From Octopus sinensis (lineage: Eukaryota), in NCBI RefSeq assembly GCF_006345805.1, contig NC_042997.1:51212001-51276000 (forward strand): a DNA stretch of 64,000 bases. The letters are read 5' to 3'. Below the pieces are notes generated by a model that had not been told where the DNA came from, made no database searches, and saw nothing but the letters and a program-made list of their open reading frames with translations. The translations under genes and the position numbers were made by a program. Position 1 is the stretch's first letter; the number at the start of each line of letters is the position of its first letter. Shown in pieces: positions 2,698 through 64,000 of the stretch.

Positions 2698-3020
2698 TCA
2701 TCATCATCATCATCATCGTTTAACGTCCGTTTTCCACGCTAGCACGGGTTGGACGGTTTGATCGGGGTCTGGGAAGTTAGGGGCTGCACCAGGCTCCAGT
2801 CTGATCTGGCAGTGTTTCTACAGCTGGATGCCCTTCCTAACGCCAACCACTCCGCGAGTGTAGTGGGTGCTTTTTACATGCCACCGGCACAGGTGCCAGG
2901 GGAGTCTGGCATTGACCACGATTGGTTGGTGCTTTTAACGTGCCACCGGCACGGAAGCCAGTCAAGGTGGCGCTGGCATCGGCCACGTTTGGATGGTGCT
3001 TTTTATGTGCCACCGGCACA
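2698..3020 (-). mobile_element. (CAT)n-tailed short retroposon or LINE 3' end, an abundant family in this window
   Basis: (CAT)n then cgtttaacgtccgttttcca...ctggatgcccttcctaacgccaaccac, with internal GTGCTTTT..TGCCACCGGCAC units. Homologous copies at 21.6, 22.0, 24.9, 25.6, 28.3, 31.7, 41.0, 47.1 and 48.0 kb. Confidence 0.85.
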
Positions 3021-3259
3021 GAAGCCACTTGTGTTCAAAAGTTTTGAATTCAAATCTTTCACCTAATCTTAGTCATAATTTAATGTTCCTAACACTAGCT
3101 TAATGATAACTGAGTTATTTTACTAAATTCTTTGTTATATTTAAGGCAATTGAAAGAAACACAGAGCATCACAAAATAAATACAGTATATATATATTACT
3201 TTTTAACATCTATTTCCCATGTGGGTTGATATATATTTTGTTTTTTCCATGTTTTGTAG

Positions 3260-16578: not shown

Positions 16579-17035
16579 GTAAGAAATTATTTTTCTTGTA
16601 TCATTTTTGTTTTCATAAAACACATTACTCTGGCATATTAAACTATATAAATCATAATTTACTTTTATAAGTTTTACCATTCAGTGTATTCACTATCAAA
16701 AACAATTAGGCGCTGTTATTTTTGTGATATTATATTTCTCAAAAGCTAGGAAGTCCAATTTTTTATTATCGATTATAATCGATAATAATTATTACTGAGC
16801 AAAATAAACATTTTTGTTACCTTTTTAGATATTTTCTTAAAATGTTATTTAGATATTAAACATACAAGCCAGCTGCATTCAGTATACAATATGTTTGCAA
16901 AAAAAAAGTACAATAGAAGTACATTCTTATTCAGTGGTACATAGCAACACAAATTCTCTTAATTATTAGTGAGTATAGTAGTAATGCATGACACATTCAA
17001 ATAATCTTAATCTATGAATAGCTGTTCAAAAGCAG

Positions 17036-21592: not shown

Positions 21593-22260
21593 TCATCATC
21601 ATCATTTAAAATCCTTTTTCCATGCTGGCATGGGTTGGAAGGTTTGACCAGAGCTAGCCAGCTGTGGACTAGACTAGGTTCCAGTGAGATTTGACTTCTA
21701 TGACTGGATGCCTTTCACAATGCCAACCACTTTACAAAGTGCTGGGTGCTTTTTACATGGCACCTGCGCAAGTGCTTTTTACATGGCCTGACACAAATAC
21801 TTCCTACATGTCTCGACATAGGTGCTTTTAATGTGACCTGGCTCTTGTATGTTTTACATGACACAGGCATAGGTAATTTTTACATGATACCAGCATGGGT
21901 GCTTTTTATGTGGAACTAGAATGAAGCTCTTGTAAGGCAAAAACCCTTTCAGCTAAAGGGGAGAATTAACTATCCTTCTGTGGTACAAAATAATATTCTA
22001 ATAATCATCATCATCATCCATATCATCATTTAATGTCCATTTTCCATGCTGGCATGAGTTGAATGAGCTGACAGGAGCTGGCAAGCTAGAGAGCTGCACC
22101 AGGTTCCAATTGTCTGTTTTGGCATAATTTCTACAACTGGATGCCTTACCTAACACCAACCACTTTACAAAGTGTACTGGGTGCTTTTTACATGGTACTG
22201 GCACATGTGCTTTTTATGTGAAACCAGCACATGTACTTTTTATGTGATACTGGCACCATG
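21593..22260 (-). mobile_element. Two tandem degenerate (CAT)n-tailed retroposons
   Basis: CAT tails at about 21593 and 22003; family core ctggatgcc...ccaaccactttacaaagtg and repeated gtgcttttt.atg units. Confidence 0.8.
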
Positions 22261-23411: not shown

Positions 23412-23535
23412 GTTCTGATGAAAGATATAGTGACACCAGTCACTCCTGAAGAAGTTAGGAAAGTTATTAAGAAATGTTTGGAAAATGCTGCGTTAGTTAA
23501 TTATACTAAGATATCTGAATATGCAAAAATTGAAG
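23412..23535 (+). CDS. CADPS: CAPS exon: [41 protein letters not shown]
   Basis: Acceptor gattttag and donor GTAGGT at 23536; 124 nt, phase 0 to 1. Confidence 0.96.
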
Positions 23536-24455: not shown

Positions 24456-24740
24456 TCTACCGTTTCTATTATTGACATAATTCTGTAAAATGTGGAGTGG
24501 ACTTGCTGTGCAGTATTTATATTTTGTATTGATCTTAATTAATAACTCATTAATAAACTTATAGCTTTTATTTATATTACTATATTATTATATATCACAT
24601 TCTACTCATTTTCCTCCTATTTTCATTTTGAAAATAAATCCCTTCATCCTACTTTCCAGGTTCTTAGACAAAAACTTTCAATTATATTTTAAAAAAGTTT
24701 TTACTTATTTCATCTAATAATAATACATCTATCTTTACAG

Positions 24741-24758
24741 CAAATGAACGTGCTGCTG
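24741..24758 (+). CDS. CADPS: Candidate 18-nt CAPS microexon (ANERAA)
   Basis: Branch-like CTAAT at 24714, acceptor atctttacag, exon CAAATGAACGTGCTGCTG, donor GTATGA. Phase 1 to 1, stop-free and frame-preserving after EYAKIE. Confidence 0.75.
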
Positions 24759-24827: not shown

Positions 24828-25568
24828 TTATTGTTATGCAGTTGTCTTTGAAATTAGAATTAAGTTGATGTCTTTGTTGTTGCTTTATATATATTTTGAA
24901 AAAAAAATAAAGTTATTGTAATTTGTATTTCATCATCATCATCATTGTTTAATTTCCGCCCTCCTTGCTTGCATGGATAGGATAGTATTACAATTAATTA
25001 TATCTATTATGTTTCTTAAATTCATTTATGTAATCTTTTAATTCTTTTACTTATATCTAACAATTATAGTTATATATATATTTAGATACTAATTTCTGCT
25101 TGTTTAATTTGTGAACAATTATTTTCCTGTTGTAATCTATGTTAAACTTAACATCTGTATCAACTTTATTTATCCATCTTCCCTTTTTTTAGATAGGATA
25201 TATACAAATGAAAACAAAAAATTGCATGAAAAGTTTATGAAGATTGATAAATCTTATAATTTCATACTAGTTGTTTAGTAATGACAAAAATATATAAAAC
25301 ACACTAGTAAATGTAATTGGTTTCAAAATATCACTTTTCTATGATGATGGTTGTCATTTAAAACTTATGACTTAACCTTCCTGTTGACATGGAAATGTTG
25401 ATGTAAAATGATGTCATTAGAACTACCAGCTATATTTTAGTATTTCCTTATATCTTGTATTCAATTTAGATAACAATGGTGTCATGCTGGTGTTGAAAGA
25501 GTTGATGTAGGATGATAGTATATTATCCTTGGTTAGACTTTCAGTCTTTCAGTCTTTTCAATGAGGCA

Positions 25569-26743: not shown

Positions 26744-27971
26744 TTGGGTCATCCCGTAAATAATGCGTTTTTTTTCAATTGCATGAACAAAAAATCAGAG
26801 GTGGAAGGGCTAAACCCCCTGCATTAACTTGCTACAAAAGCAGGTAGTAATTTTAACTTATACTTATTCTCAGTGCAAGTTTTTGAAGAGTGCTCTTCGA
26901 TTTTAACAGTTATTTTTTTCAATGCTATAATGGAAGTGACAAAGGAGCATATTCAGCGTATTTTGCTAGGAACATTAATGCAGTATATGGGGATTGGACA
27001 ATAAGTGTAAGTCAATGTCAACAGTGGCTTCAGAAATTCAGTGCCGGAAACTACAGCCTAGAAGACATGCCTTGTCCTGGAAGATCTGTAGAGTTCGATG
27101 AGGATGTCCTGCAAAACCTGGTGGAACAAAATCCCATTGTAACTGTTGAGGAACTAGCAGAGAAGCTTGGATTTTGTTCATTCAACCATTTATCAACTCT
27201 TGTGTGCTATTAGAAAAGTCATCAAATTGGGTTAATGGGTTCCTCACAAACTTTCCAAGTCTAATCATTGGCAGAGAGTGAATATGTGCTTTTCTTTGCT
27301 GTCACGTCTCACAAATGAGCCTTTTTTTGGACCGAATAGTGATTGGTGATGAGAAATGGGTTCTCTATAAAAATGTCAAGTACTGAAGACAGTGGGTAGG
27401 GAAAGGAGAATCACCAGCACCCCAGGCTAGAGTTCTTCACCCACGTAAGCTGTTGTTTGGTGGGATATGAAAGGTTTAGTCCACTTTGAACTTTTAAACA
27501 TAAACCATATGATGACAAAGGAGATCTACTGTGAGCAGCTTGAAAGCTTAAGTCAGTGCTAGAAGAAAAATGACCATCTTTGGTTTCAAGATGAAAGATG
27601 TTCTTCCATTAGGATAATGCTTGGCCACATACAGTGAGGATGACATTCCAAAAGCTGGAGCAGTTTGAATCGGAAACTATGCCCCACCCACCATATTTGC
27701 TGGACATTGTCCCATCTGATTATCATTTATTCCACAGTCTTCAAAATCATTTGGATGGAAAAAATATGAATTCTGTAGACAAGGCCAGAACAGTACTGAA
27801 GGAGTATTTTTCATCACAGACAAGTGAATTTTGCAAGTCTATCTGATAGATAGAAGAGCATTGTAGAAATTGAAGGAGAGTATATTTTAGATTTAAAAAG
27901 AACTTTGTTATCTTAATTTTGAACAATAGAAGAAGTATAAAAAAACCTGCATTATTTATGGGATGACCCAA
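26744..27971 (+). mobile_element. Full-length but inactivated mariner transposon (1228 bp)
   Basis: TIRs TTGGGTCATCCCGTAAATAATGC / GCATTATTTATGGGATGACCCAA with TA on both flanks. Motifs IGDEKWV, DNAWPH and HPPYLLDIVPSDYHLF are present with stops and frameshifts. Confidence 0.95.
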
Positions 27972-28019: not shown

Positions 28020-28800
28020 TTGTCCATTGGGATTTGTTCTGCCAGAGTAACATATAAGTTGAAATAGGCCTTCATACCAGTGACAAACATAATAAACAAG
28101 AATGGGGACCCAAATCTTTCTCAAAATTCTCCACAGTAAATTTCTGTTCATTGTATCAAAGATTTTCTTTAGATCAACAAAAACTTGGTATAAGAGGAAT
28201 CTCTGCTCTATACACTTTGCTTGCAATTATCTACTGCTAATGATCACATTTTGTGATGCTTCTACCAAATCTAAATCCTTGTTGAAACTCTGTTACAACA
28301 CTGAAGTGTATGTCTTCAGATCATCATTGTTGTTTAATGTCCGCTTTTCATGCTGGCATGGGTTGGATGGTTTGATTGTGGGCTGACAAGCTAGAAGGCT
28401 GCACCAGGCTCCAATCTCATCTGGCAAAGTTTATGCCAAAATTTACAAGAAAATACTACACACATTATCACTGTTTGACTTGGTAATTTTCTCCTTTGAT
28501 CAGGGAAATCTATATAGCATCTCTCCAATCAGTTGTAACTGATATATTCACTATTAGTGTGGTCACAAGATTAGCCACAACATCCCCATTATGCTTAATA
28601 ATCTTAGCTGGTATACCATCAGCTCCTGGTGTGTTTTTTTCTGATTTGACCTGTTTAATGACAGTTTTGACTAACTCTATACTAGGATTTTTATCCATTT
28701 CTTCCATAATATAGTGCTGCAGTAAATCTTTTATGACGTTCTCATATGTTTTGGATAGATTGTAGAAAAGAACTGCGAAATACTCTAGAATAGATAACAT
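28020..28800 (-). mobile_element. Decayed RTE-like RT, interrupted by a (CAT)n retroposon at about 28320-28440
   Basis: PGADGIPAKII, QQGFRFGRS and QAKCIEQ...FVDLKKIFDTMNRNLLWRIL lie on either side of the insertion. Confidence 0.75.
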
Positions 28801-36159: not shown

Positions 36160-36192
36160 CTGCTGCCGCTGCTGCAGGGCTTGTTTCAGGTG
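36160..36192 (+). CDS. CADPS: Candidate 33-nt CAPS microexon (AAAAAAGLVSG); 30 nt if the upstream donor is used
   Basis: Strong pyrimidine tract tccccctttttactccag, then a GC-rich codon-like island in AT-rich intron. Donor GTAGGT at 36193, alternative GTGGTA at 36190. Phase 1 to 1. Confidence 0.7.
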
Positions 36193-36245: not shown

Positions 36246-36251
36246 TGCATG
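36246..36251 (+). promoter_or_regulatory. TGCATG (RBFOX-type) downstream of microexon 2, with further copies at 36405 and 36856
   Basis: Exact hexamers about 54, 213 and 664 nt after the donor; function inferred. Confidence 0.4.
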
Positions 36252-38304
36252 ATATTTTGGTGGTGTTGAATAGATGTGTAATCTTTTCTCTCTCTTCTGT
36301 TATTTTGCACCTCAGATACATTTCACAAAATATCTAATTTATATATTTTATATTTGTAGTAATTGAAGTATGAGTGTGTTTATATATGCATACATGTGTG
36401 TGTGTGCATGTTATTTATACATATCAACCAGTAATATAACATAATATGATCTTGATTCAATACTTTTAAAAAGCTCTTAATTTAATCAAGAACTTTTTAA
36501 GAACAAATTTATATGCAGAAATAAAGGTTCCAGTCATAATGGAGTTAACACAGTCAGTTTAGTTTATCATAGCTCTAGTTTAATTTGGTTTTGTGTGAAC
36601 TTAAAAATGTTTAATATATATATAACAATAAGTTATATTTTCCTTATGTCATTACTTAAAAATCAGTATATTTAAAAGGCAATTTATTTTGCCAATTTTT
36701 CGGAAGTAATATTTTCTTTAGCATGTCATTAAAATTAGATTGACTTAAAATATTATCATAATTAGTATTTACAACTTCTAAATTTATTTGACAGCATCAA
36801 TATGAAATTGCCTTTTTGTTTCAAGGCTGATTAAGGCTACTCAATAATAATAATATGCATGCCCATACAATTCTTTATTCTTATCACTTTATTTAAATAC
36901 CTTAGATTTATTCTTTAAAATATTATTTCAAAAAAAATCTTTCTCTGCTTATGTTTTCATATTACATTGTATGTATATGTGTGTGTGTGTGTGTAAGAGA
37001 GAGAGTTAGAGTACATATTTTTCAAATGTGTAAATCATAAGAAATACATCCAATCACCAGTCACTTTCCTTAACTCAAAATCATTTGCTCTTACCTATCG
37101 CATTGATACTCTACATCATATCTGATCCTTTGGGTTTTGTTGTTTAATCAAGAGCCTCAACCAAATTTTTTTTACTCTCCAAAATAACTTCCTTGAAGAT
37201 GTCAAGATTTTTAATTTCTCTGGTTCTCCTAATTCATTACACAGGTACATCTGATGTGGGAGCTCAGATCTTTATCCTTAAAAAATTTGCCAACTAATCT
37301 TTTCTCACTTTTATAGTTACAATTCTTCTCCTTAACCCTACCAACTCTTGATTCCTTCCTCATTTCACAATTAACCTATACTTCTATACATCTAAGTTTC
37401 CTTTCAGTTATTCATTTGACCTCTTTCTCATAACCACCACTTGCATAAGAGCCAAATAAACCCATCTGCACCTTGAATTTGCCTGCTGATAGTCTGCACC
37501 GTAGAAATTACCTTTACCATAAATAAGATGAAAGAAAACCCTGTGTGATATAAATATTATTGGCTTATCATTTCCACATGCTGAGTTTCTAATCTGAGGG
37601 TAGTGGTTTTAAATGATCACTTTCCTTACTAACTTAATGCTGTTTCCCTCCTCAATGACTGCAAGTATATTTCCACAGAACAATATAAAATGGAGCATTT
37701 CTCTTACATCATATATTAGTGTTTTTTTCATCTGTGAAAACTCAAGGTTGCTCAGTTTATTCATAATGTTAATTTTTTTAGTTTTACAGTAATGTGATTT
37801 AACATCATTATTTTCACATCTCTCTGAAATGTAAGAGCTTATTACATTAGGTAAATCATGTACATCATCAAAGTATTTTTTCATTGCAGGTTTAACCCTG
37901 ATGCTTCTTAAATTAGGAGAGTTATTACTTCTTTAACAAGATTCATTGTTGTTTTTTATAGCTTCATTATGTGCCCATTTCAATTGGTATATGTTTAGGA
38001 CTGATTTAGTCTACACAAACCAAATTTCTAATCCAATTCCTTGTACTGGAAGCAATTTTGATTCCAATTTTTAAAGTTTGCAATTGCTAGTGTTGAACTA
38101 TATTGATTAGTGTTGAACTAATCTGATATCCCATCAACTCAAAGGACTTTGTTATCTGTTAGCATGAAGAATAGTGTGATAGTTGAAAATTAATTGAGGT
38201 AAAAAGGACTTTAAATTTTTCTCTCTGTTGGGAGAGTGCATTTAACACCATTTTGACTGTTTGCACCATAATTTGTGCAATTCAAAATTTTTGACATGCA
38301 AGTA

Positions 38305-40977: not shown

Positions 40978-41487
40978 TCATCATCATCATCATCATCATC
41001 ATCGTTTAGCGTCCGTTTTCCATGCTAGCATGGGTTGGACGGTTCTACTGGGGTCTGTGAAGCCAGAAGACTTCATCAGGCCCAGTCAAATCTGGCAGTG
41101 TTTCTACGGCTGGATGCCCTTCCTAACGCCAACCACTCCGTGAGTGTAGTGGGTGCTTTTTACGTGCCACCCGCACTGGTGCCAGACAGAGCTGGCAAAC
41201 GGCCACGAATGGATGGTGCTTTTTATGTGCCACCGGCACGAGGGCCAGGCGAAGCTGGCAACGGACACGAAACGGGGCGGTGCTGGCAACGGTCGCGAAA
41301 CGGAAAGTTCTCTTACATGCCACCGGCACTGGTAACACATCTGCAATTTCCATTGATCGATTTCGATTCTGATTCTCACTTGCCTCAACGGGTCTTCAGA
41401 AGTAGAGTTTCGACATGCCACCGGCACTGGTAACACATCCGCAATTTCCATTGATCGATTTCGATTCTGATCCTCACTTGCCTCAAC
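40978..41487 (-). mobile_element. Well-preserved (CAT)n-tailed retroposon with an internal 75-bp direct repeat
   Basis: Close homologue of 2698-3020. 41315-41389 and 41413-41487 match with 2 mismatches. Confidence 0.85.
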
Positions 41488-42433: not shown

Positions 42434-43314
42434 CAGGTTGTCCCAAAAGTCACTGATGGGTTTCAGTTTTTAATAACTTCCTTAACTTTACAAATAAATG
42501 CATGAAATTTTGATTGTATATAAAGGTCATAATGGAAATTAATATGCACAAGTCAAATTTTGCAACACCACTACATCATATGCGAAAAATAACATCGCTT
42601 AAATGACAGCCATTTTCGGCTTTGCACTCTGGTGCTCTTTCCAAAACTTGCACCATAACGCCTTCAACAGTTTCAGACCCCACTTTTCTGATTTCTCTAT
42701 CGATGTTCTCCTTCAGTTGCACCAGGGTCTCCAGTTTGTTGACATAAACCCTCTCTTTCAGGTATCTCCACAAGAAAAAAATCAGGCTAGTCAAGTTTGG
42801 GGAACATGAAGGCCAATCAAAGTAGACCTCAAACATGGTTCCAGCAAGATGGGAATCTGCTCATTCTGCAAGAGAAACAGTACAGTTGCTACAGTAGTAC
42901 TTTGGAGAGAGAATAATCTCCTGCTACAGCAATGTCAACTGGCCTTCACATTCCCCAGACGTGACTAGCCCGAATTTTTTCTTATGGGGATACCTGAAAG
43001 AGGAGGTTTATGTAAAAAAACTGGAGACTCTGGGGCAACTGAAGGAGAACATCAATACAGAAATCAGAGAATGGGATCTGTTGAGGGTGTCATGGTGCAA
43101 GTTTTGGAAAGAGCACAGGTGTGCAAAGCCAAAAATGGCTGCCATTTAAGCGATGTCATTTTTTGTATATGATGTAGTTGTGTTGCAAAATTTGACTTGT
43201 GCATATTAATTTCCATTATGTCCTTTATATTGTATCAAAATTTCATGCATTTATTTGTAAAGTTAAGGAAGTTATTAAAAATTGAAACCCATCAATGACT
43301 TTTGGGACACCATG
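42434..43314. mobile_element. Palindromic non-autonomous rosa-like (DD41D) Tc1/mariner derivative made of two transposon 3' ends
   Basis: TA-flanked ends CAGGTTGTCCCAAAAGTCA / TGACTTTTGGGACACCATG. Arms 42434-42815 and 42940-43314 both encode WP..SP.LT...FFLW.YLKE.VY. Confidence 0.9.
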
Positions 43315-47230: not shown

Positions 47231-48498
47231 GATGAATATGATATACTTTAAATATTATTTGAGTGCACTGGTGTTGCTTAAAATTATCATTGAAAATGTA
47301 TTTTAAATCTTTGGTTAATGTATATCTCCTGAAATTCTTATTCACTTATTCACAAAGGTATTGCAATTGCATAAAATGATATGGAGAAAAATCATTATGA
47401 TCATATTACAATCTAGTAATGCTTCTAAACATAATTAGAAGAACAAAAACTGTTCAGTATTTCAGATTGATAGATAAGATCATCTAATTAAAAACAGAGT
47501 TCATCAGATAATGAAATAACAGCTGATTGGTAACATGGTAACCTATGAAGCAATACATACACTGAGTCCTGTCAGTGAGCCTGTTGCTTTTTTTGTCTCA
47601 GACTTGGGCTTATAATAGTCTATACCAGAATTTATCAGTTTCATAAATTCTAATAACATTACTATACTGTGTATTAAATATTTGTCAATCATTAGTGGCA
47701 TATTTTCCCCCAAAATCCTTTTTAGAATTAGTAAGTTGATAATGATCATATCTTAAATTTCTTTATTTTTATACATAGTGTCTGAAAAACTCACCTGTGA
47801 AAATATGTAGCATTTTGCATCTTTTTAAGTCAATATAAATTGCAGTGTGCATCACATTCACTATTTAGTAAGTTAAATAACTGAATTTTCTGCATGTTTC
47901 TCTTTCCTAATGTAATAGTATGTTACTGTTTTTTTTAGAGACGTGCAGTAGCAACTGACAGTCTTATCTCAATTTTTAAAAAAATTATTTTGCTGGCATA
48001 GGTTGGATGGTTTGACAGAAGCTGGCTAGTCAGAAAACTGCACCAAGCACTACTGCCTACTTTAGCATGATTTCTACAACTGGATGCCCCTCCTAACATT
48101 AACCACTTTGCAGAGTGTACTGGGTAGGACCAACAGCAGTGAGGTCATCAAATAACTTACAAGACATCAGCTGATGGGGGAGTAGTATTGAAGGAAGTGG
48201 CTTAGTGCCAGGTGGTGAGAGGTAAGGACAGAAATAGGTATTTTGCAGTAAAGGTACAAAGCTACATCAGTAGGAGACAGTGATGGAGTAGAGAGAGAGA
48301 GAGAGAGACTGGAGACAAGATGGTGAAAATGGGATGAGTGGGTACACTCAAGTTACAGGGAAGTGTATATTAGTTTAGTCAAATCAAGGATTAGACTGGA
48401 TGAGTGAATAGGTGACTTCACAAGATTGTTAAAGGAGAGTGGGGGATGGAGAGGAGGGATATAGTGGGTGGACACAAACAGAAAGAGGGAGTTTTTGG

Positions 48499-52485: not shown

Positions 52486-55060
52486 ATCTCCATCAATGTT
52501 GTTTTTAGGCAGGACGTTTCACTACTTTTGGGATGTTGGTTGAGTCGATTTGCAACCTTCATCCATCGTCTCAAGAAAATCTTCCTCTCTCTTGGAATCT
52601 TGTTCCTAATTGTATTGGCCTTGTGCTCTGGGACATATTTCTGGCATATGGCTTGCACAACAGACATGAAACATTCTAGTTTCATACCAATGTCTGGTGT
52701 GGAGAGACATTTTGGCCAGTCCTCACTGAAGATCACTTTTTGGATCATTTTCCAGTCTGCTTTGTGGAAGTTCAGATTGGAGAGATTTTGGGTGCTTCCT
52801 TTAGGCTGTATGTCTCTGGTTACTTTCAGCCAAACATAGCTCGATAATGTTGTGATCTGAGACTAATGTCAGCGTCACTTTCACATCATGAATGATGTTC
52901 ATATTGTTTGTGAAGCAGAGATCCAGAATGTTATTTGCCCTAGTTGGTCTGAGTACAGCTTGCTCCATGAATAGGGCATTGGTGAGGTTAAGCAGGGACT
53001 CCACCTGCTCTTGCTTGCAATGAGTCATTCCTGAGAGTATGAGACCTTCGGGCCATTTGACGTTGGGGGAGGTTGAAATCGCCCATAAGAAATATGGTCA
53101 CGTGGTGTTCCAGATTCATGAGGATTTCTTTAATTCTTGTGAGGCAATCTTCAAACTTGCCTATATGGTTTGGAGCATCTGGTGGGCAATATGTATTGCA
53201 TATGACTATATTGTGTTGTCTTATGTATACAATTAGTTTGTCACATACTGAATTTGAGTATGACAGTAAGATCTGGGGTGTGAGGTCATCAGGGATGTAT
53301 GCAGCAACCCCTCCATAGCTCCTTTCCCTTCAGTATGGCATAGTTTGGTACGTGTACTTCTGCATCCTCTACATCAGGGTTGAGGTGAGTTTCCACGAGT
53401 GCTATGCATAGGGCTTGATTGCATGCATTAAGATCTCTCAGGAAAGAAATTTTGCTTTTATTATGATGCAACAGGCTCCTAATATTTAGTAAAAGTATTG
53501 GGGTGACGACTGTGTAGGCATTAGGGGAGGCCATCCCGTGTCTGTTGACTGTAGTGGTCTTGCATAGTGATGGGCAAGGTTCTTTGTTTGTGCTTGGTGT
53601 AGCCAAGTCAGCTGCTGTACAATCCTTTGTGCCATGCACAAAAAAGATTCTTGCTCAACTGCTGCATTGCACATAACATCTGAAGAGCACACTTCTTTTG
53701 TAAATTTTTTCCTTGGAGACATTTGTTGTCTTTCCTCAGTGAAGTTTTTCTCTTTAAGGCCCCTGTAGTTCTGGCGGAGTGTCAGGTGAGCAAACCGACA
53801 GTTTTTGCCACCCCCCCCCCATGCCAACATTTGCCTTGCTGGTAAAATTTGCAGGTTCTTGAGTGCCTTCCAAATTTCTTCTTTCCTGTAGGGTTTTTGA
53901 TGGCATTGGATCCTCCATGGGATTTTCTGTTGTTTGTTTGGTGGGTTGGGGTTTCGGTTTTGGTTGTATTATTTTTGCCTTTTCCTTTTTCTTCCTTTCC
54001 TTCTTTATTTTTGTTTTCTGTCCTTTCTTTTCTTGTGGTGGGAACTTTTTTCTTCTGGTTTTTTATTGGGGTGAGGGCTCCATTCCTTTGTAGGACCACT
54101 GGCGCAGGGGGGATTCTAGTTACTGCTTCCTTGGCTCCCCTATCCTTTTCTGCTTGGTCGTTCACCGGGGCTGGTGATCCATTCTTTTGAGGAACCTCTG
54201 GATCACAGAGACTTCCAGGTTTTGTTTACTTTTCATCTTCTCCATCCTTATTGGCCTTGCCACAATAGTTTTCGATTATGCCATCCAAGGTGTCAATATG
54301 TGGTCTTATATGCTCTATCTGGTCAATGGTTCTGTGAAAACCATTCTTCTTCAGTGCAGCAGTGATGATGTTGTTTGACGGGTTGCCACTAGCAATCATC
54401 CATGCTCGCAGCAGTAGATTTAATTCCTTCTTCTCCCACGTAGGTGCCATCTTCGTTTTTAAGCCCTGAATGGGAGTAGAGGTAATAGATAGAGGGAGGA
54501 AGAAACACAGAGGGAGGAAATAGTGAAAGAGAGAGGAAAATATGAAGGAAAGAGATAGGTTGATATGGGGAAGGCAAGGGGGTGAGGTGTGTTAGAGAGA
54601 CAGATGAAGGAAGAGGAAGGGGAGAGAAAGAGAGACAGGGTGAGGGAGAGGAGGGGAATAGAAAGAGAGACAGAGTGAACGAGAGGAGGGGAAGAGAAAG
54701 AGAGATACAGTGAAGGAGAGGAGGGAAAGAGAAAGAAAGACAGAGGGAGTGAGAGAAAGGGAGAACCGGAGTGAGAAGAAGGGGTAAATGAGAAGTATAT
54801 GAGGGAGAGGGTGAGGTGACAGGAGGAGAGGTAGATGTTGTGAGATACAAAGGAAAGGAAAGAGAAGTGAGAAAAGAGGGGGATTTGAAAGGGAGGGAGA
54901 GAGATGAGAAAAAGAGTAAGATATGCAAGAGAGAGGGAAAGAGTAGGCGTAAAGAGAGATAAAGGGAGAAATATATGTAAGGGAGAAGAGAGGAAGAGTA
55001 TATATGAAAGACAGTGAGAGCAGGTAATGAAGATGTATAGGAAAACGGAAAACAATATAT
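52486..55060 (-). mobile_element. LINE family B (CR1/L2-like), 5' half: CT-rich 5' region, Cys/His-rich ORF1 and endonuclease; 3'-truncated
   Basis: ORF1 from 54450 with CKFYQQGKCWH..CRFAH. Endonuclease motifs LLLNIRSL, IALVETHL, GDFNLP, PTRANNILDL and SDHN. Confidence 0.88.
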
Positions 55061-61719: not shown

Positions 61720-64000
61720 ATATGCATATATGACATAACATTTTCATGAATATTTTCGGATAGAAATATAAGAGAAATACGAACTCCCCACGTCCAAGAC
61801 AAATCTCACATAGAGAAGATTTTGAGAAGGACCAAAGAATAAGTAAGAAGTTCTCCCTCTCTAGTCATTTCTTCCATAATAATCACCGCTTCCAAACAGA
61901 ACATTACCATTACAACAATCCCACTCAGAGCCGTCCACAACAAAGAACCCACAACAGACCAAGGGTTTGTGGAAGGACTAATTAGTTACACTAATTCCCT
62001 ATACGAGAGAAACCATTCTGGGCCAAAACCAGGACACTCAATGGTACCAACCAAATATGAGATTTCGAAGGTGATAAATATCTCACATAAAGCCCTGTTG
62101 AACCAGGAAATAAAAATTCTTGCAAAGGGATTAATGTTCACCCCAACACCACAAAGGTTGAACCTAAATGATATACAAAATGACATCCAAGAATTCTGCA
62201 GAAAACTTCGCATCACTGAAGAACTACTGGATAAAGATAATAATGATCAATCAATCCTTCACAATAAAAGTAACTACTGTCCGACAAAAGGAAGAAATCA
62301 AACTCTGGATAACTTTTGTTATTTGATTTCCATTTACCTCTCCAATTTACTCCCACCCCGAAAATTTTAAATAAATACAAATAGAGAAGAATGGGAAATC
62401 GTTAATAATCTCAGGGAGGATGACAACAAAATTATAAAAGAAGCTAACAAAAGTGGAACTGTAGTTCTCATGGACACAAAAAAATACATAAACGCTACCC
62501 TAACTCTCCTTTGAGACAATACCCACTATGAAAAAATCAACAACTACAGTCAATCCAAGATAATGACCAAACTGTCTACCCTTATCCACCAGTTCCAATG
62601 AGGTTTAACAAAAATGGAGACAGATGACTTCACTAGATTTGACTGCAAACCATAACTTCTATGGACTTCCCAAAATCCACAAAAGTGAGGTCATAAACGA
62701 AGCCTGTAACAAGTCAACTTGTAAAGTCATAAATATTCCACACTCCAGAGATCTCAAAATAAGACCAATTGTGGTCTTAAACCTATTCTCCAAGATATAC
62801 CATGCTTTATATGGGATGATCTGGACTTTTTAAACCATCTCCAGAACAAAATCAGCAAAGACTCCCTCCTGGCTTCATTCAATGTAATAAACCTCTACAC
62901 CTTGATTCCTCATGAATACGGAATAATAGCCATACAATACTGGCTGGAAAAATTCCCAAATGACATTCCTGACAGAATTGGAAAAGAATTCATCGTTGAA
63001 GGAATAAAATTCATCCTACAGAACAACTTCTTCAATTTCAACAAAAACACTTTCAGACAAAAATCAGGCACAGTAATGGGAATGCGGGTAGTGCCTACTT
63101 TTGCCAACCTTGTCATGGCATACTTGGAAGTCCAAATATACAAACACACTAGATTGAAATTTGGAGACAACTTCCAAAAATACTTACTCACCAACTGGAA
63201 ACGTTACCTGGATGACTGTTTCATCCTGTGGCCACATAACCTTGAGCAACTTTCAAAATTTAAAAACTTAATCAACAGCATTAACCACAGTATCCAGTTT
63301 ACAATGGAATATAGCCACAAACAATTACCCTTCCTGGACATCTTAATAATAAAGAGAAATACTGAAATTGAAACCAACATCGTCTTCAAACCAACAGACT
63401 CAAAACAATATCTTCTATTCTCCTCTTGCCACCCAAAACATATAAAATAGATATGCCGTTCAACTTAGCGAGAAGAATTTGCACGATTGCATCAAATCCC
63501 GAAACCTGAGAAAAGCGACTCCAAGAACTTAAAAACACATTACTAGATAGAAAATACCCAGCCAGTCTAATCAAAAATGGAATAGAACATGCAAAAATGA
63601 TAGACATCCAAGAGTTAGGGAAAACAAGAACACACCATCACACACTTAAAACTCTATCTTATGTATCAACTCACAACACAATCAAACAAACATGGAAGCA
63701 TACATCATCCACCAAAACATACCCCTCCTTATGAAGGACCCACAAATGAAAAAGGCACTAGAAACACATAGGATTATTAAAAGCAAGAGACAACCACAAT
63801 CCCTAAAAAATTACTCACCAGCACCAAATTACCCACTAAAAATACCTCACAAGTCAAAAAGTGCAACCACCCTAACTGCGGGGCTTGCATCTTCCTCTTA
63901 TAGGGCTCAACTTACAAATTTAAGTCAGGTCAAACTTTTACCATAAAATATGACTTCACTTATGCTTTGAAGAACTTAATCTATGTTCTTAAATGTGGAG
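61720..64000 (+). mobile_element. Penelope-like retroelement RT, frameshifted, running off the window end
   Basis: FYGLPKIHK, RPIV, NLYTLIPH, GTVMG...PTFANLVM, WKRYLDDCFILW, FSSCHPKH and a C-terminal CNHPNC. Confidence 0.88.

What the first reader, a model, noticed from the sequence alone, without database searches (positions are those of the whole stretch)
24741..24758. 18-nt CAPS microexon that may be homologous to the vertebrate ENQKDA insert
Seen: a clean AG/GTATGA-bounded 18-nt phase-1 cassette 1.2 kb after the EYAKIE exon encodes ANERAA, with a branch-like CTAAT upstream and TGCATG 64 nt downstream. Recalled, not verified: human CAPS1 has [26 protein letters not shown], a 6-aa segment at the same position. 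ANERAA and ENQKDA share N2 and A6, with E/Q and R/K conservative. Inference: a neural microexon shared by cephalopods and vertebrates at the entry to the MUN region.
Basis: partly seen in the sequence, partly recalled or inferred. Interest (0 to 1): 0.75.

Follow-up and report, generated by a model that had tools for sequence, protein, structure and literature searches.

The report
Octopus CAPS 18-base alternative microexon
The 18-base exon is a real, already annotated, optional piece of the octopus CAPS (vesicle-priming) gene. It sits at a spot where nearly all bilaterian animals splice in short inserts, but it cannot be shown to be the same exon as the vertebrate ENQKDA insert.

Summary
Window 24741-24758 (+) is ag|CAAATGAACGTGCTGCTG|gtatga, 18 nt, phase 1-1. 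It lies 1,206 nt after the ...EYAKIE exon (23412-23535) of the Octopus sinensis CAPS/CADPS gene and reads ANERAA.

Splice signals alone would not single it out: 32 similar decoys lie in the same 40 kb. Other evidence does:
- RefSeq isoforms of O. sinensis and O. bimaculoides include or skip it.
- Argonauta hians has ANERAA.
- A distant cephalopod contig has ag|CTGCTGAACGCGCGGCGG|gt (AAERAA) in the same intron, with three synonymous changes.

It is the first of three independent cassettes: ANERAA (18 nt), AAAAAAGLVSG (33 nt, window 36160-36192) and EEQQ (12 nt, beyond the window). Each has TGCATG 46-64 nt downstream.

The vertebrate half of the idea is partly right. Frog DNA shows ENQKDA as a free-standing 18-nt phase-1 exon in the orthologous intron. 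However, the same intron carries different short cassettes in every phylum sampled. Examples are GRK/GS, GRKK/GNC, AKHGKS, ATHNGKSK, AQSGKGG and vertebrate e16a.

ANERAA resembles ENQKDA only weakly (p 0.004-0.02 uncorrected), and AAERAA does not (p 0.36). The splice site is homologous. Exon-level homology is unproven, and neural specificity was not testable.

The parts
23412..23535 (+). Constitutive CAPS exon (124 nt) reading [41 protein letters not shown]. It ends in phase 1 (GAA G|gtaggt).
   Evidence: Translation. 100% match to O. sinensis XP_036356657.1 by tblastn. The same GAA G|gt boundary occurs in Lingula, amphioxus, Gadus, frog and Lottia.
24714..24718 (+). CTAAT, a branch-point-like motif 24 nt upstream of the acceptor.
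   Evidence: Read directly. It fits the CTRAY consensus but is common in AT-rich intron sequence. Not tested further.
24741..24758 (+). Cassette A: 18-nt phase 1-1 microexon CAAATGAACGTGCTGCTG, reading ANERAA.
   Evidence: Sequence. Included or skipped in RefSeq isoforms of O. sinensis and O. bimaculoides. Present in Argonauta hians GAB1599148.1. Conserved as AAERAA, with AG/GT and three synonymous changes, in cephalopod contig L007.
24822..24827 (+). TGCATG (Rbfox-type motif) 64 nt downstream of the cassette A donor.
   Evidence: Only 5.2% of 100-nt windows in this sequence hold a TGCATG.
24970..24975 (+). Second TGCATG, 212 nt downstream of cassette A.
   Evidence: Only 0.97% of 300-nt windows hold two or more.
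36160..36192 (+). Cassette B: 33-nt phase 1-1 exon CTGCTGCCGCTGCTGCAGGGCTTGTTTCAGGTG, reading AAAAAAGLVSG. Bounded by ccag|...|gtaggt.
   Evidence: Independently included or skipped in RefSeq isoforms. Present in Argonauta.
36246..36251 (+). TGCATG 54 nt downstream of the cassette B donor. A further copy lies at 36405.

Best explanation
Window 24741-24758 is a genuine alternatively spliced 18-nt cassette exon of the Octopus sinensis CAPS (CADPS) gene. It is the first of three independently used tandem cassettes:
- A: ANERAA, 18 nt.
- B: AAAAAAGLVSG, 33 nt.
- C: EEQQ, 12 nt.

All three lie in one roughly 67-kb phase-1 intron between the exon ending ...EYAKIE and the exon starting ESLQAEVSPKKRLED.... 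Including them lengthens the segment that joins the helix ending in EYAKIE to the first helix of the DAMH/MUN module. The nine residues ESLQAEVSP between EYAKIE and KKRLED grow to as many as 30.

Inferred: cassette A, and the alanine run of B, prolong the preceding helix. This changes the spacing and orientation between the PH-proximal region and the MUN module.

Inferred: inclusion is promoted by an Rbfox-type factor bound to the UGCAUG found 46-64 nt downstream of each of the three cassettes.

Shown: the exon is conserved within cephalopods.

Inferred on origin: the intron position and its use as an insertion point for short regulated cassettes are ancestral to bilaterians. The cassettes themselves differ between lineages. 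ANERAA is therefore best treated as a cephalopod-lineage cassette at a recurrent splicing hot spot, not as a demonstrable orthologue of vertebrate ENQKDA.
For: - Exon anatomy.
- Isoforms: none / A / B / A+B / A+B+C in XP_ models of two Octopus species. Argonauta has A+B.
- Genome placement: O. sinensis-sized assembly, with the next exon 26.5 kb past the window end.
- Cassette C: tctcag|AAGAGCAACAAG|gtgagc at window-equivalent 79723-79734.
- Cephalopod conservation: L007:15525-15542 has ttttccag|CTGCTGAACGCGCGGCGG|gtacgaat, reading AAERAA. It matches 12/18 nt, with CGT>CGC and GCT>GCG twice being synonymous. It is one of only 12 loose candidates in 7.2 kb, and it is the best local alignment of the flank query on that contig.
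- TGCATG lies at +64 (A), +54 (B) and +46 (C). Background is 5.2% per 100-nt window, so the joint chance is about 1.4e-4.
- Structure: an AlphaFold model of isoform X5 has a helix at 588-628 running through EYAKIE-ANERAA-AAAAA, a low-confidence loop at 630-643, and a helix at 647-679. PDB 6A68 starts just after the site.
- Hot spot: different cassettes sit at the identical GAA G|gt boundary in oysters, scallops, Haliotis, heterobranchs, Mercenaria, Mya, chiton, nemerteans, Lingula, amphioxus, hemichordates, starfish, arthropods and vertebrates.
- Functional precedent: the neighbouring mouse cassette e16a at this same site changes CaV2.2 coupling (PMC13232204).
Against: - No RNA-seq reads were examined. 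Transcript support is inferred from RefSeq models.
- Tissue specificity is unknown.
- The downstream TGCATG is not present within 300 nt of the AAERAA exon in L007, so the Rbfox inference is not supported by conservation.
- The helix prediction over the cassette has pLDDT of only about 60, and that stretch has no alignment depth.
- The species of L007 is unknown.
- The ANERAA/ENQKDA pair is the best-scoring pair among all cassettes compared with ANERAA. Shared ancestry is therefore not excluded.
Confidence: 0.72

Rival explanations
1. One reading: ANERAA and vertebrate ENQKDA descend from one 18-nt microexon that was already present in the bilaterian ancestor.
For: - Same gene, same intron, same phase and the same 18-nt length in octopus, L007, frog and mammals.
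- ANERAA vs ENQKDA scores BLOSUM62 11, the best of all cassette pairs tried with ANERAA, with p = 0.004-0.023 uncorrected.
- 10/18 nt are identical to the frog exon, binomial p about 0.013.
- Both exons lie near the 5' end of a long intron: 1.2 kb of 67 kb in octopus, 2.6 kb of 15 kb in frog.
Against: - AAERAA in the other cephalopod scores 3 (p = 0.36) with 7/18 nt identical. The N2 match is therefore not a fixed cephalopod character.
- The p-value does not survive correction for about 8 comparisons and post-hoc choice.
- No ANERAA-like or ENQKDA-like cassette appears in any other mollusc, brachiopod, nemertean, hemichordate, echinoderm, arthropod or amphioxus isoform.
- The teleost paralogue has a 33-nt VEKGQKDPKDP exon, so only QKD is conserved within vertebrates.
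- ENQKDA follows e16a as the second cassette, whereas ANERAA is the first.
- Flanking motifs differ.
- A 20-species study that included O. bimaculoides called only the APBB and MADD microexons ancestral to bilaterians, and CADPS does not appear in its main text.
Confidence: 0.17
2. ANERAA is the strongly diverged cephalopod descendant of an older lophotrochozoan first cassette of the A-x-H-(x)-G-K-S type, seen in Lingula (ATHNGKSK) and heterodont bivalves (AKHGKS/AKHGKP). Any link to ENQKDA would be indirect or absent.
For: - Lingula ATHNGKSK and Mercenaria AKHGKS are clearly similar (score 18, p = 0.002). A cassette of this type therefore predates the mollusc-brachiopod split, and the cephalopod ancestor should have had it.
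- Like it, ANERAA starts with Ala (G|CN).
- ANERAA is 18 nt, as in Mercenaria and Mya.
- It is the first cassette, about 1.2 kb after the upstream exon. The Lingula exon lies at 1.24 kb and the amphioxus AQSGKGG exon at 1.6 kb.
Against: - ANERAA shows no significant similarity to AKHGKS, ATHNGKSK or AQSGKGG (scores 0-2, p = 0.39-0.67).
- The Lingula and amphioxus exons carry a TGC 9 nt before the acceptor. The cephalopod exons do not.
- Pteriomorph bivalves and gastropods show yet other cassettes: GRK, GRKK, GS, GNC, GGA.
Confidence: 0.2
3. The exon is splicing noise or an annotation artefact without function.
For: - Splice signals are no better than about 30 decoys in the same intron.
- RefSeq X-isoforms are computational models.
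Against: - It is annotated independently in O. sinensis, O. bimaculoides and Argonauta.
- Frame, length, AG/GT and 5 of 6 residues are kept in a cephalopod whose introns no longer align. The third-position changes are synonymous.
- TGCATG enrichment is shared with cassettes B and C.
Confidence: 0.03

Closest known systems
Vertebrate CADPS/CAPS1 18-nt microexon encoding (E)NQKDA
   Same: - Orthologous gene.
- Orthologous phase-1 intron after ...EYAKIE.
- 18 nt, frame-preserving and optional.
- Free-standing with AG/GT (frog L011:3737-3754; isoforms).
   Different: - Sequence is only weakly similar.
- It is the second cassette, after e16a.
- It has no GCATG within 300 nt downstream in frog.
- It is 33 nt in a cod paralogue.
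- No traceable intermediates occur in other phyla.
Mouse Cadps exon 16a (23-residue cassette GKKREMYEHPVFCLASQVMDLTI; PMC13232204)
   Same: - It inserts at exactly the same exon junction (EYAKIE|).
- It is optional and cell-type specific.
- The preprint reports that inserts here change CAPS function, through CaV2.2 coupling.
   Different: - It is 69 nt, not a microexon.
- It is highly conserved across vertebrates: frog and cod match at 96%.
- No counterpart was found in the octopus window (best tblastn E above 3).
Recurrent ('type I convergent') neural exons at equivalent coding positions, e.g. the syd/SPAG9 hot spot (bioRxiv 10.64898/2026.09.05.749416)
   Same: Different short cassettes occur at the same coding position in orthologous genes of many phyla. 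The exons are small (data).
   Different: - CADPS does not appear in the main text of that paper, and no supplements were held.
- Neural specificity of the octopus exon is untested.
Rbfox-enhanced cassette exons (downstream UGCAUG)
   Same: TGCATG lies 46-64 nt downstream of each of the three octopus cassettes, a strong enrichment over background.
   Different: - No binding or perturbation data exist.
- The motif is not conserved at the AAERAA exon of L007.
SRRM3/4 (eMIC)-dependent neural microexons
   Same: Length is 27 nt or less, the gene is a synaptic or secretory one, and the exon preserves the frame.
   Different: The UGC motif close to the 3' splice site is absent from both cephalopod exons. 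It is present upstream of the Lingula, amphioxus and cod microexons at this site.

Membership tests
Alternatively spliced cassette microexon | Length of 30 nt or less with canonical AG...GT borders, preserving the frame | tested here: met
   18 nt, ctttacag|...|gtatga, phase 1-1, no stop codon.
Alternatively spliced cassette microexon | Both inclusion and skipping isoforms exist | tested here: met
   RefSeq isoforms of O. sinensis and O. bimaculoides exist with and without ANERAA, independently of cassettes B and C. This is model-level evidence. Reads were not inspected.
Alternatively spliced cassette microexon | Conserved in related species | tested here: met
   ANERAA occurs in Argonauta hians. 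An AAERAA exon with AG/GT and synonymous changes occurs in contig L007.
Neural microexon programme (SRRM3/4, eMIC) | Neural-enriched inclusion | not testable with these tools
   No tissue RNA-seq was available.
Neural microexon programme (SRRM3/4, eMIC) | UGC motif within a few tens of nt upstream of the 3' splice site | tested here: not met
   No TGC occurs in the 40 nt upstream of the octopus or L007 exon. It is present at -5 to -9 in Lingula, amphioxus and Gadus.
Rbfox-enhanced exon | (U)GCAUG in the proximal downstream intron | tested here: met
   TGCATG at +64 and +212 (A), +54 and +213 (B), and +46 (C). Background is 5.2% per 100 nt.
Rbfox-enhanced exon | Motif conserved in orthologous introns, or dependence on Rbfox | tested here: not met
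   No GCATG lies within 300 nt downstream of the L007 exon. Dependence on Rbfox is not testable here.
Orthologue of the vertebrate CADPS ENQKDA exon | Same intron position and phase in orthologous genes | tested here: met
   GAA G|gt after ...E[YF]A[KR]IE in octopus, frog, cod, amphioxus, Lingula and Lottia.
Orthologue of the vertebrate CADPS ENQKDA exon | The vertebrate insert is a separate exon, not an alternative 3' splice site | tested here: met
   Frog L011:3737-3754 lies 12.6 kb upstream of the next exon. The cod 33-nt exon lies 2 kb upstream of the next exon.
Orthologue of the vertebrate CADPS ENQKDA exon | Sequence similarity beyond chance | tested here: inconclusive
   ANERAA gives p = 0.004-0.023 uncorrected. 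AAERAA gives p = 0.36. Nucleotide identity to the frog exon is 10/18 and 7/18.
Orthologue of the vertebrate CADPS ENQKDA exon | Traceable in intermediate lineages | tested here: not met
   Other molluscs, Lingula, nemerteans, hemichordates, starfish, arthropods and amphioxus carry unrelated cassettes.
Orthologue of the vertebrate CADPS ENQKDA exon | Same order relative to neighbouring cassettes, or shared flanking elements | tested here: not met
   ENQKDA follows e16a, whereas ANERAA is the first of three cassettes. No e16a-like sequence occurs in the window, and the flanking motifs differ.

The most novel reading that the evidence does not exclude
The junction after ...EYAKIE in CAPS carries a microexon that is ancestral to bilaterians. 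Under this reading, ANERAA (cephalopods), AKHGKS (heterodont bivalves), ATHNGKSK (brachiopod), AQSGKGG (amphioxus) and ENQKDA (vertebrates) are diverged descendants of one exon about 700 million years old. It would have been kept for regulated lengthening of the PH-MUN linker rather than for its sequence.

This would add a case to the two ancestral microexons (APBB, MADD) currently recognised.
Probability: 0.18. Interest if true: 0.65.

Novelty: new member of a known kind. Interest (0 to 1): 0.4.

Why it matters
CAPS primes dense-core and synaptic vesicles. A 2026 preprint reports that the neighbouring mouse cassette at this same junction (e16a) switches CaV2.2 coupling and pain behaviour.

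The octopus uses this junction too, with three independently optional micro-cassettes, and almost every bilaterian phylum inserts something there. This marks the PH-to-MUN linker as a recurrent, probably functionally tunable, control point of the exocytosis machinery.

It is a clean case for asking whether deep conservation of microexon programmes lies in the exon or in the site.

The octopus exon itself is already in public annotation and is not surprising on its own.

Tried and rejected
- **PDB search with the upstream exon peptide.** No CAPS hit. A longer query found only 6A68, which starts after the site.
- **Genomic DNA for Argonauta and Haliotis CAPS.** Mercenaria, Mizuhopecten and one amphioxus isoform were not on record.
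- **Logan contig L008 from another octopod.** It aligns at 85% for 0.3 kb into the intron but ends before the microexon.
- **Short-query protein search for spliced transcript fragments.** It returned mostly genomic read-through calls (...EYAKIEG+intron) and no cephalopod transcript junctions.
- **ENQKDA as an alternative 3' splice site extension (GATGCAG|AA).** Rejected by frog and cod DNA.
- **EEQQ as an alternative acceptor of the ESLQ exon.** Rejected: it is a separate 12-nt exon 10.8 kb upstream.
- **Cassettes A and B as tandem duplicates.** Rejected: their flanks align no better than shuffles.
- **CADPS microexons described in the literature.** These lie at other positions. One is the 9-nt GLK exon. 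Another is the 9-nt exon 19 of CADPS2. The third is the RBFOX1-dependent exon between LQQNEEH and FAVDMDA.
- **A GRK-type 9-nt exon in the octopus intron, as in other molluscs.** None found.

Full report
**What is in the window.** The + strand carries part of a CAPS/CADPS gene. tblastn with Octopus sinensis XP_036356657.1 places exons for residues 242-618 between 3260 and 23537, most at 100% identity. The window is G000:C1:51212001-51276000 of a 2.72-Gb, 13,516-contig assembly. The exon at 23412-23535 reads VLMKDIV...[12 protein letters not shown] and ends GAA G|gtaggt, in phase 1.

At 24741-24758 lies ctttacag|CAAATGAACGTGCTGCTG|gtatga. With the carried-over G it reads ANERAA. CTAAT sits 24 nt before the acceptor and TGCATG 64 nt after the donor.

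**Is it more than chance?** Not on the signals alone. The 40.5 kb of this intron inside the window hold 77 open AG-N18-GT candidates in phase 1. Three of them fit YAG|N18|GTRNG, and there are 32 such strict candidates of 6-33 nt. The exon is validated by other data.

- I searched with an X-padded query so that full-length proteins would qualify. The O. sinensis isoform X5 returned reads EYAKIE-ANERAA-AAAAAAGLVSG-EEQQ-ESLQAEVSPKKRLED.
- The 90% cluster contains O. sinensis and O. bimaculoides RefSeq isoforms with none, A, B, A+B or A+B+C of three cassettes. Gnomon has no way of proposing 12- to 33-nt cassettes without read support; that step is inference.
- The Argonauta hians protein GAB1599148.1 has ANERAA-AAAAAAGLVSG.
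- A short-query search returned genomic read-through fragments. One (P0430) led to a 27.9-kb ENA contig, L007. Its EYAKIE exon is 88% identical at the nucleotide level, while its introns no longer align. About 5.4 kb downstream it has ttttccag|CTGCTGAACGCGCGGCGG|gtacgaat, reading AAERAA.
  - It matches 12 of 18 nt.
  - It has three synonymous third-position changes and one replacement (N>A).
  - It is one of only 12 loose candidates in 7.2 kb.
  - It is the top local alignment of the octopus flank query.

The exon is therefore under purifying selection across a deep cephalopod split. The species of L007 is unknown.

**The surroundings.**
- Cassette B is at 36160-36192: ccag|CTGCTGCCGCTGCTGCAGGGCTTGTTTCAGGTG|gtaggt.
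- The next constitutive exon (tttatag|AATCTCTGCAG..., ESLQAEV...) lies at window-equivalent 90508.
- Cassette C (EEQQ) is a free 12-nt exon, tctcag|AAGAGCAACAAG|gtgagc, at window-equivalent 79723-79734.
- A and B are not duplicates of each other.

All three cassettes have TGCATG shortly downstream: +64 and +212 for A, +54 and +213 for B, +46 for C. Only 5.2% of 100-nt windows and 0.97% of 300-nt windows in this sequence reach one and two copies respectively. The joint chance of one motif within 100 nt of all three is about 1.4e-4. This is the known architecture of Rbfox-enhanced exons (established knowledge).

There are two limits on this inference. The motif is not seen within 300 nt of the L007 exon. 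Neither cephalopod exon has the UGC motif near the acceptor that marks SRRM3/4-dependent microexons. The Lingula, amphioxus and cod microexons at this site do have it.

**Protein context.** An AlphaFold model of isoform X5 was built from a 40-sequence alignment (mean pLDDT 68). It has a helix at 588-628 that runs through EYAKIE, ANERAA and five alanines of B, with pLDDT about 60. Residues 630-643 fall below 50, followed by a helix at 647-679 ([27 protein letters not shown]). The crystallised CAPS1 fragment 6A68 starts at ENVGRL, immediately after the site.

The cassettes thus lengthen the connection into the DAMH/MUN module, probably by prolonging a helix. This is an inference of low confidence.

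**The vertebrate side.** Mouse and pangolin isoforms show four states: [12 protein letters not shown], +ENQKDA, +e16a (GKKREMYEHPVFCLASQVMDLTI), and both. e16a is the nociceptor-enriched mouse exon 16a that a 2026 preprint reports as coupling CAPS1 to CaV2.2 (PMC13232204).

Frog (Staurois parvus) DNA settles the structure:
- Exon 16 ends GAA G|gtaaga.
- e16a (69 nt) follows 1.8 kb later.
- Next comes acaaatag|AGAATCAAAAGGATGCAG|gtgaac (18 nt, ENQKDA).
- The ENVGRL exon follows 12.6 kb further on.

A cod paralogue has e16a and then a 33-nt exon reading VEKGQKDPKDP.

**Is it the same exon?** The boundary GAA G|gt after ...E[YF]A[KR]IE is shared by octopus, Lottia, Lingula, amphioxus, cod and frog. 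The intron is ancestral, and any frame-preserving cassette in it must be phase 1-1.

The cassettes differ everywhere:

| Lineage | Cassette(s) at the site |
|---|---|
| Oysters | GRK + GSGST/GSGTLT |
| Scallops | GRK + GS |
| Haliotis | GRKK + GNC |
| Heterobranch gastropods | GRKKGAG/GTG |
| Patella / Lottia | GGA / GGS |
| Mercenaria | AKHGKS or DHDLSSD |
| Mya | AKHGKP or VDYPEVFPDPDGDGDD |
| Chiton | GRGKNK |
| Nemerteans | GREQGKK |
| Lingula | ATHNGKSK (24-nt exon, 1.24 kb in) |
| Amphioxus | AQSGKGG (21-nt exon, 1.6 kb in) plus a 57-nt alternative-acceptor extension |
| Hemichordates, starfish, arthropods | Other inserts |

The similarity tests gave these results:

| Comparison | Score / identity | p (uncorrected) |
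|---|---|---|
| ANERAA vs ENQKDA, BLOSUM62, general background | 11 | 0.004 |
| ANERAA vs ENQKDA, cassette-composition background, gapped | 11 | 0.023 |
| AAERAA vs ENQKDA | 3 | 0.36 |
| Octopus exon vs frog exon, nucleotides | 10/18 | about 0.013 |
| L007 exon vs frog exon, nucleotides | 7/18 | 0.22 |
| ANERAA vs any other invertebrate cassette | 0-4 | 0.20-0.67 |
| Mercenaria AKHGKS vs Lingula ATHNGKSK | 18 | 0.002 |

With roughly eight comparisons and a post-hoc choice, the octopus-vertebrate match is not significant. Six of its eleven points come from N2, which is not fixed in cephalopods. The only clearly similar cross-phylum pair is Mercenaria AKHGKS and Lingula ATHNGKSK.

A recent 20-species analysis that included O. 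bimaculoides recognised only the APBB and MADD microexons as ancestral to bilaterians. It describes frequent independent origin of neural exons at equivalent coding positions. The CAPS site fits that pattern.

**Verdict.** The exon is real, cephalopod-conserved and already in public annotation. The site is an ancestral, pan-bilaterian insertion point. Orthology of ANERAA with ENQKDA is possible (I put it near 0.17) but unsupported. Neural specificity and Rbfox dependence remain to be tested.

Noticed in passing
window 36160-36192, and G000:C1:51291723-51291734 (window-equivalent 79723-79734): Two further independent micro-cassettes lie in the same intron: AAAAAAGLVSG (33 nt) and EEQQ (12 nt). 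Each has TGCATG about 50 nt downstream. A+B creates an eight-alanine run.
   Followed up: yes
L006 (amphioxus) 52671-52748: A possible unannotated 78-nt exon, aaatcag|ATTTGAAACTTAAACATGGAGAG...GACT|gtatgt, is in frame in phase 1. It lies 99 nt upstream of the AQSGKGG microexon. Its translation (KHGECYEHTNFCLSSTI) matches 9 of 17 residues of vertebrate e16a (tblastn E = 0.05). If real, e16a would predate vertebrates.
   Followed up: partly
L004 (Gadus chalcogrammus) 47966-48037: A perfectly conserved e16a exon (23 of 24 residues) is present in the cod gene but absent from the deposited protein model P0040. That model also seems to repeat a PH-domain segment after the MUN start.
   Followed up: partly
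L005 (Lingula) 25404-25427 and L015 (Lottia) 16803-16811: The Lingula 24-nt ATHNGKSK microexon has GCATGC directly before its polypyrimidine tract and acceptor. Lottia has a candidate 9-nt GGS exon (ctatag|GAGGAAGTG|gtaggt) matching the GGA insert of Patella. It is not in the Lottia gene model.
   Followed up: partly
window 26887-27843 and 42898-43146: Remnants of mariner/Tc1-type transposase lie inside the intron. The Mos1 HTH_48 domain scores E = 6e-7. Motifs such as DNAWPHT and SPD..P.FFLWGYLK are also present.
   Followed up: partly
window 61843-63768: Long open frames with a reverse-transcriptase domain (RVT_1, E = 3e-5, YLDD motif). This is a retroelement copy in the intron, on the + strand.
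   Followed up: partly
window 2743-3063, 21688-21828, 28286-28383, 41029-41430, 47952-48026: A repeated element whose translation reads ...HGLDGL.GV.E.R.CT/HQ...LAVFL.LDALPNANHS.SVVGAFY.PPA... recurs in several introns. It is probably an abundant octopus interspersed repeat. It had no Pfam match.
   Followed up: no
P0001 residues 675-690 (outside the window): A second variable site follows ...[12 protein letters not shown] (octopus LRDKSKLSPWESNYTS), with many lineage-specific inserts in other phyla. The RBFOX1-dependent mouse Cadps microexon of PMC13067610 maps to this second site, not to the EYAKIE site.
   Followed up: partly
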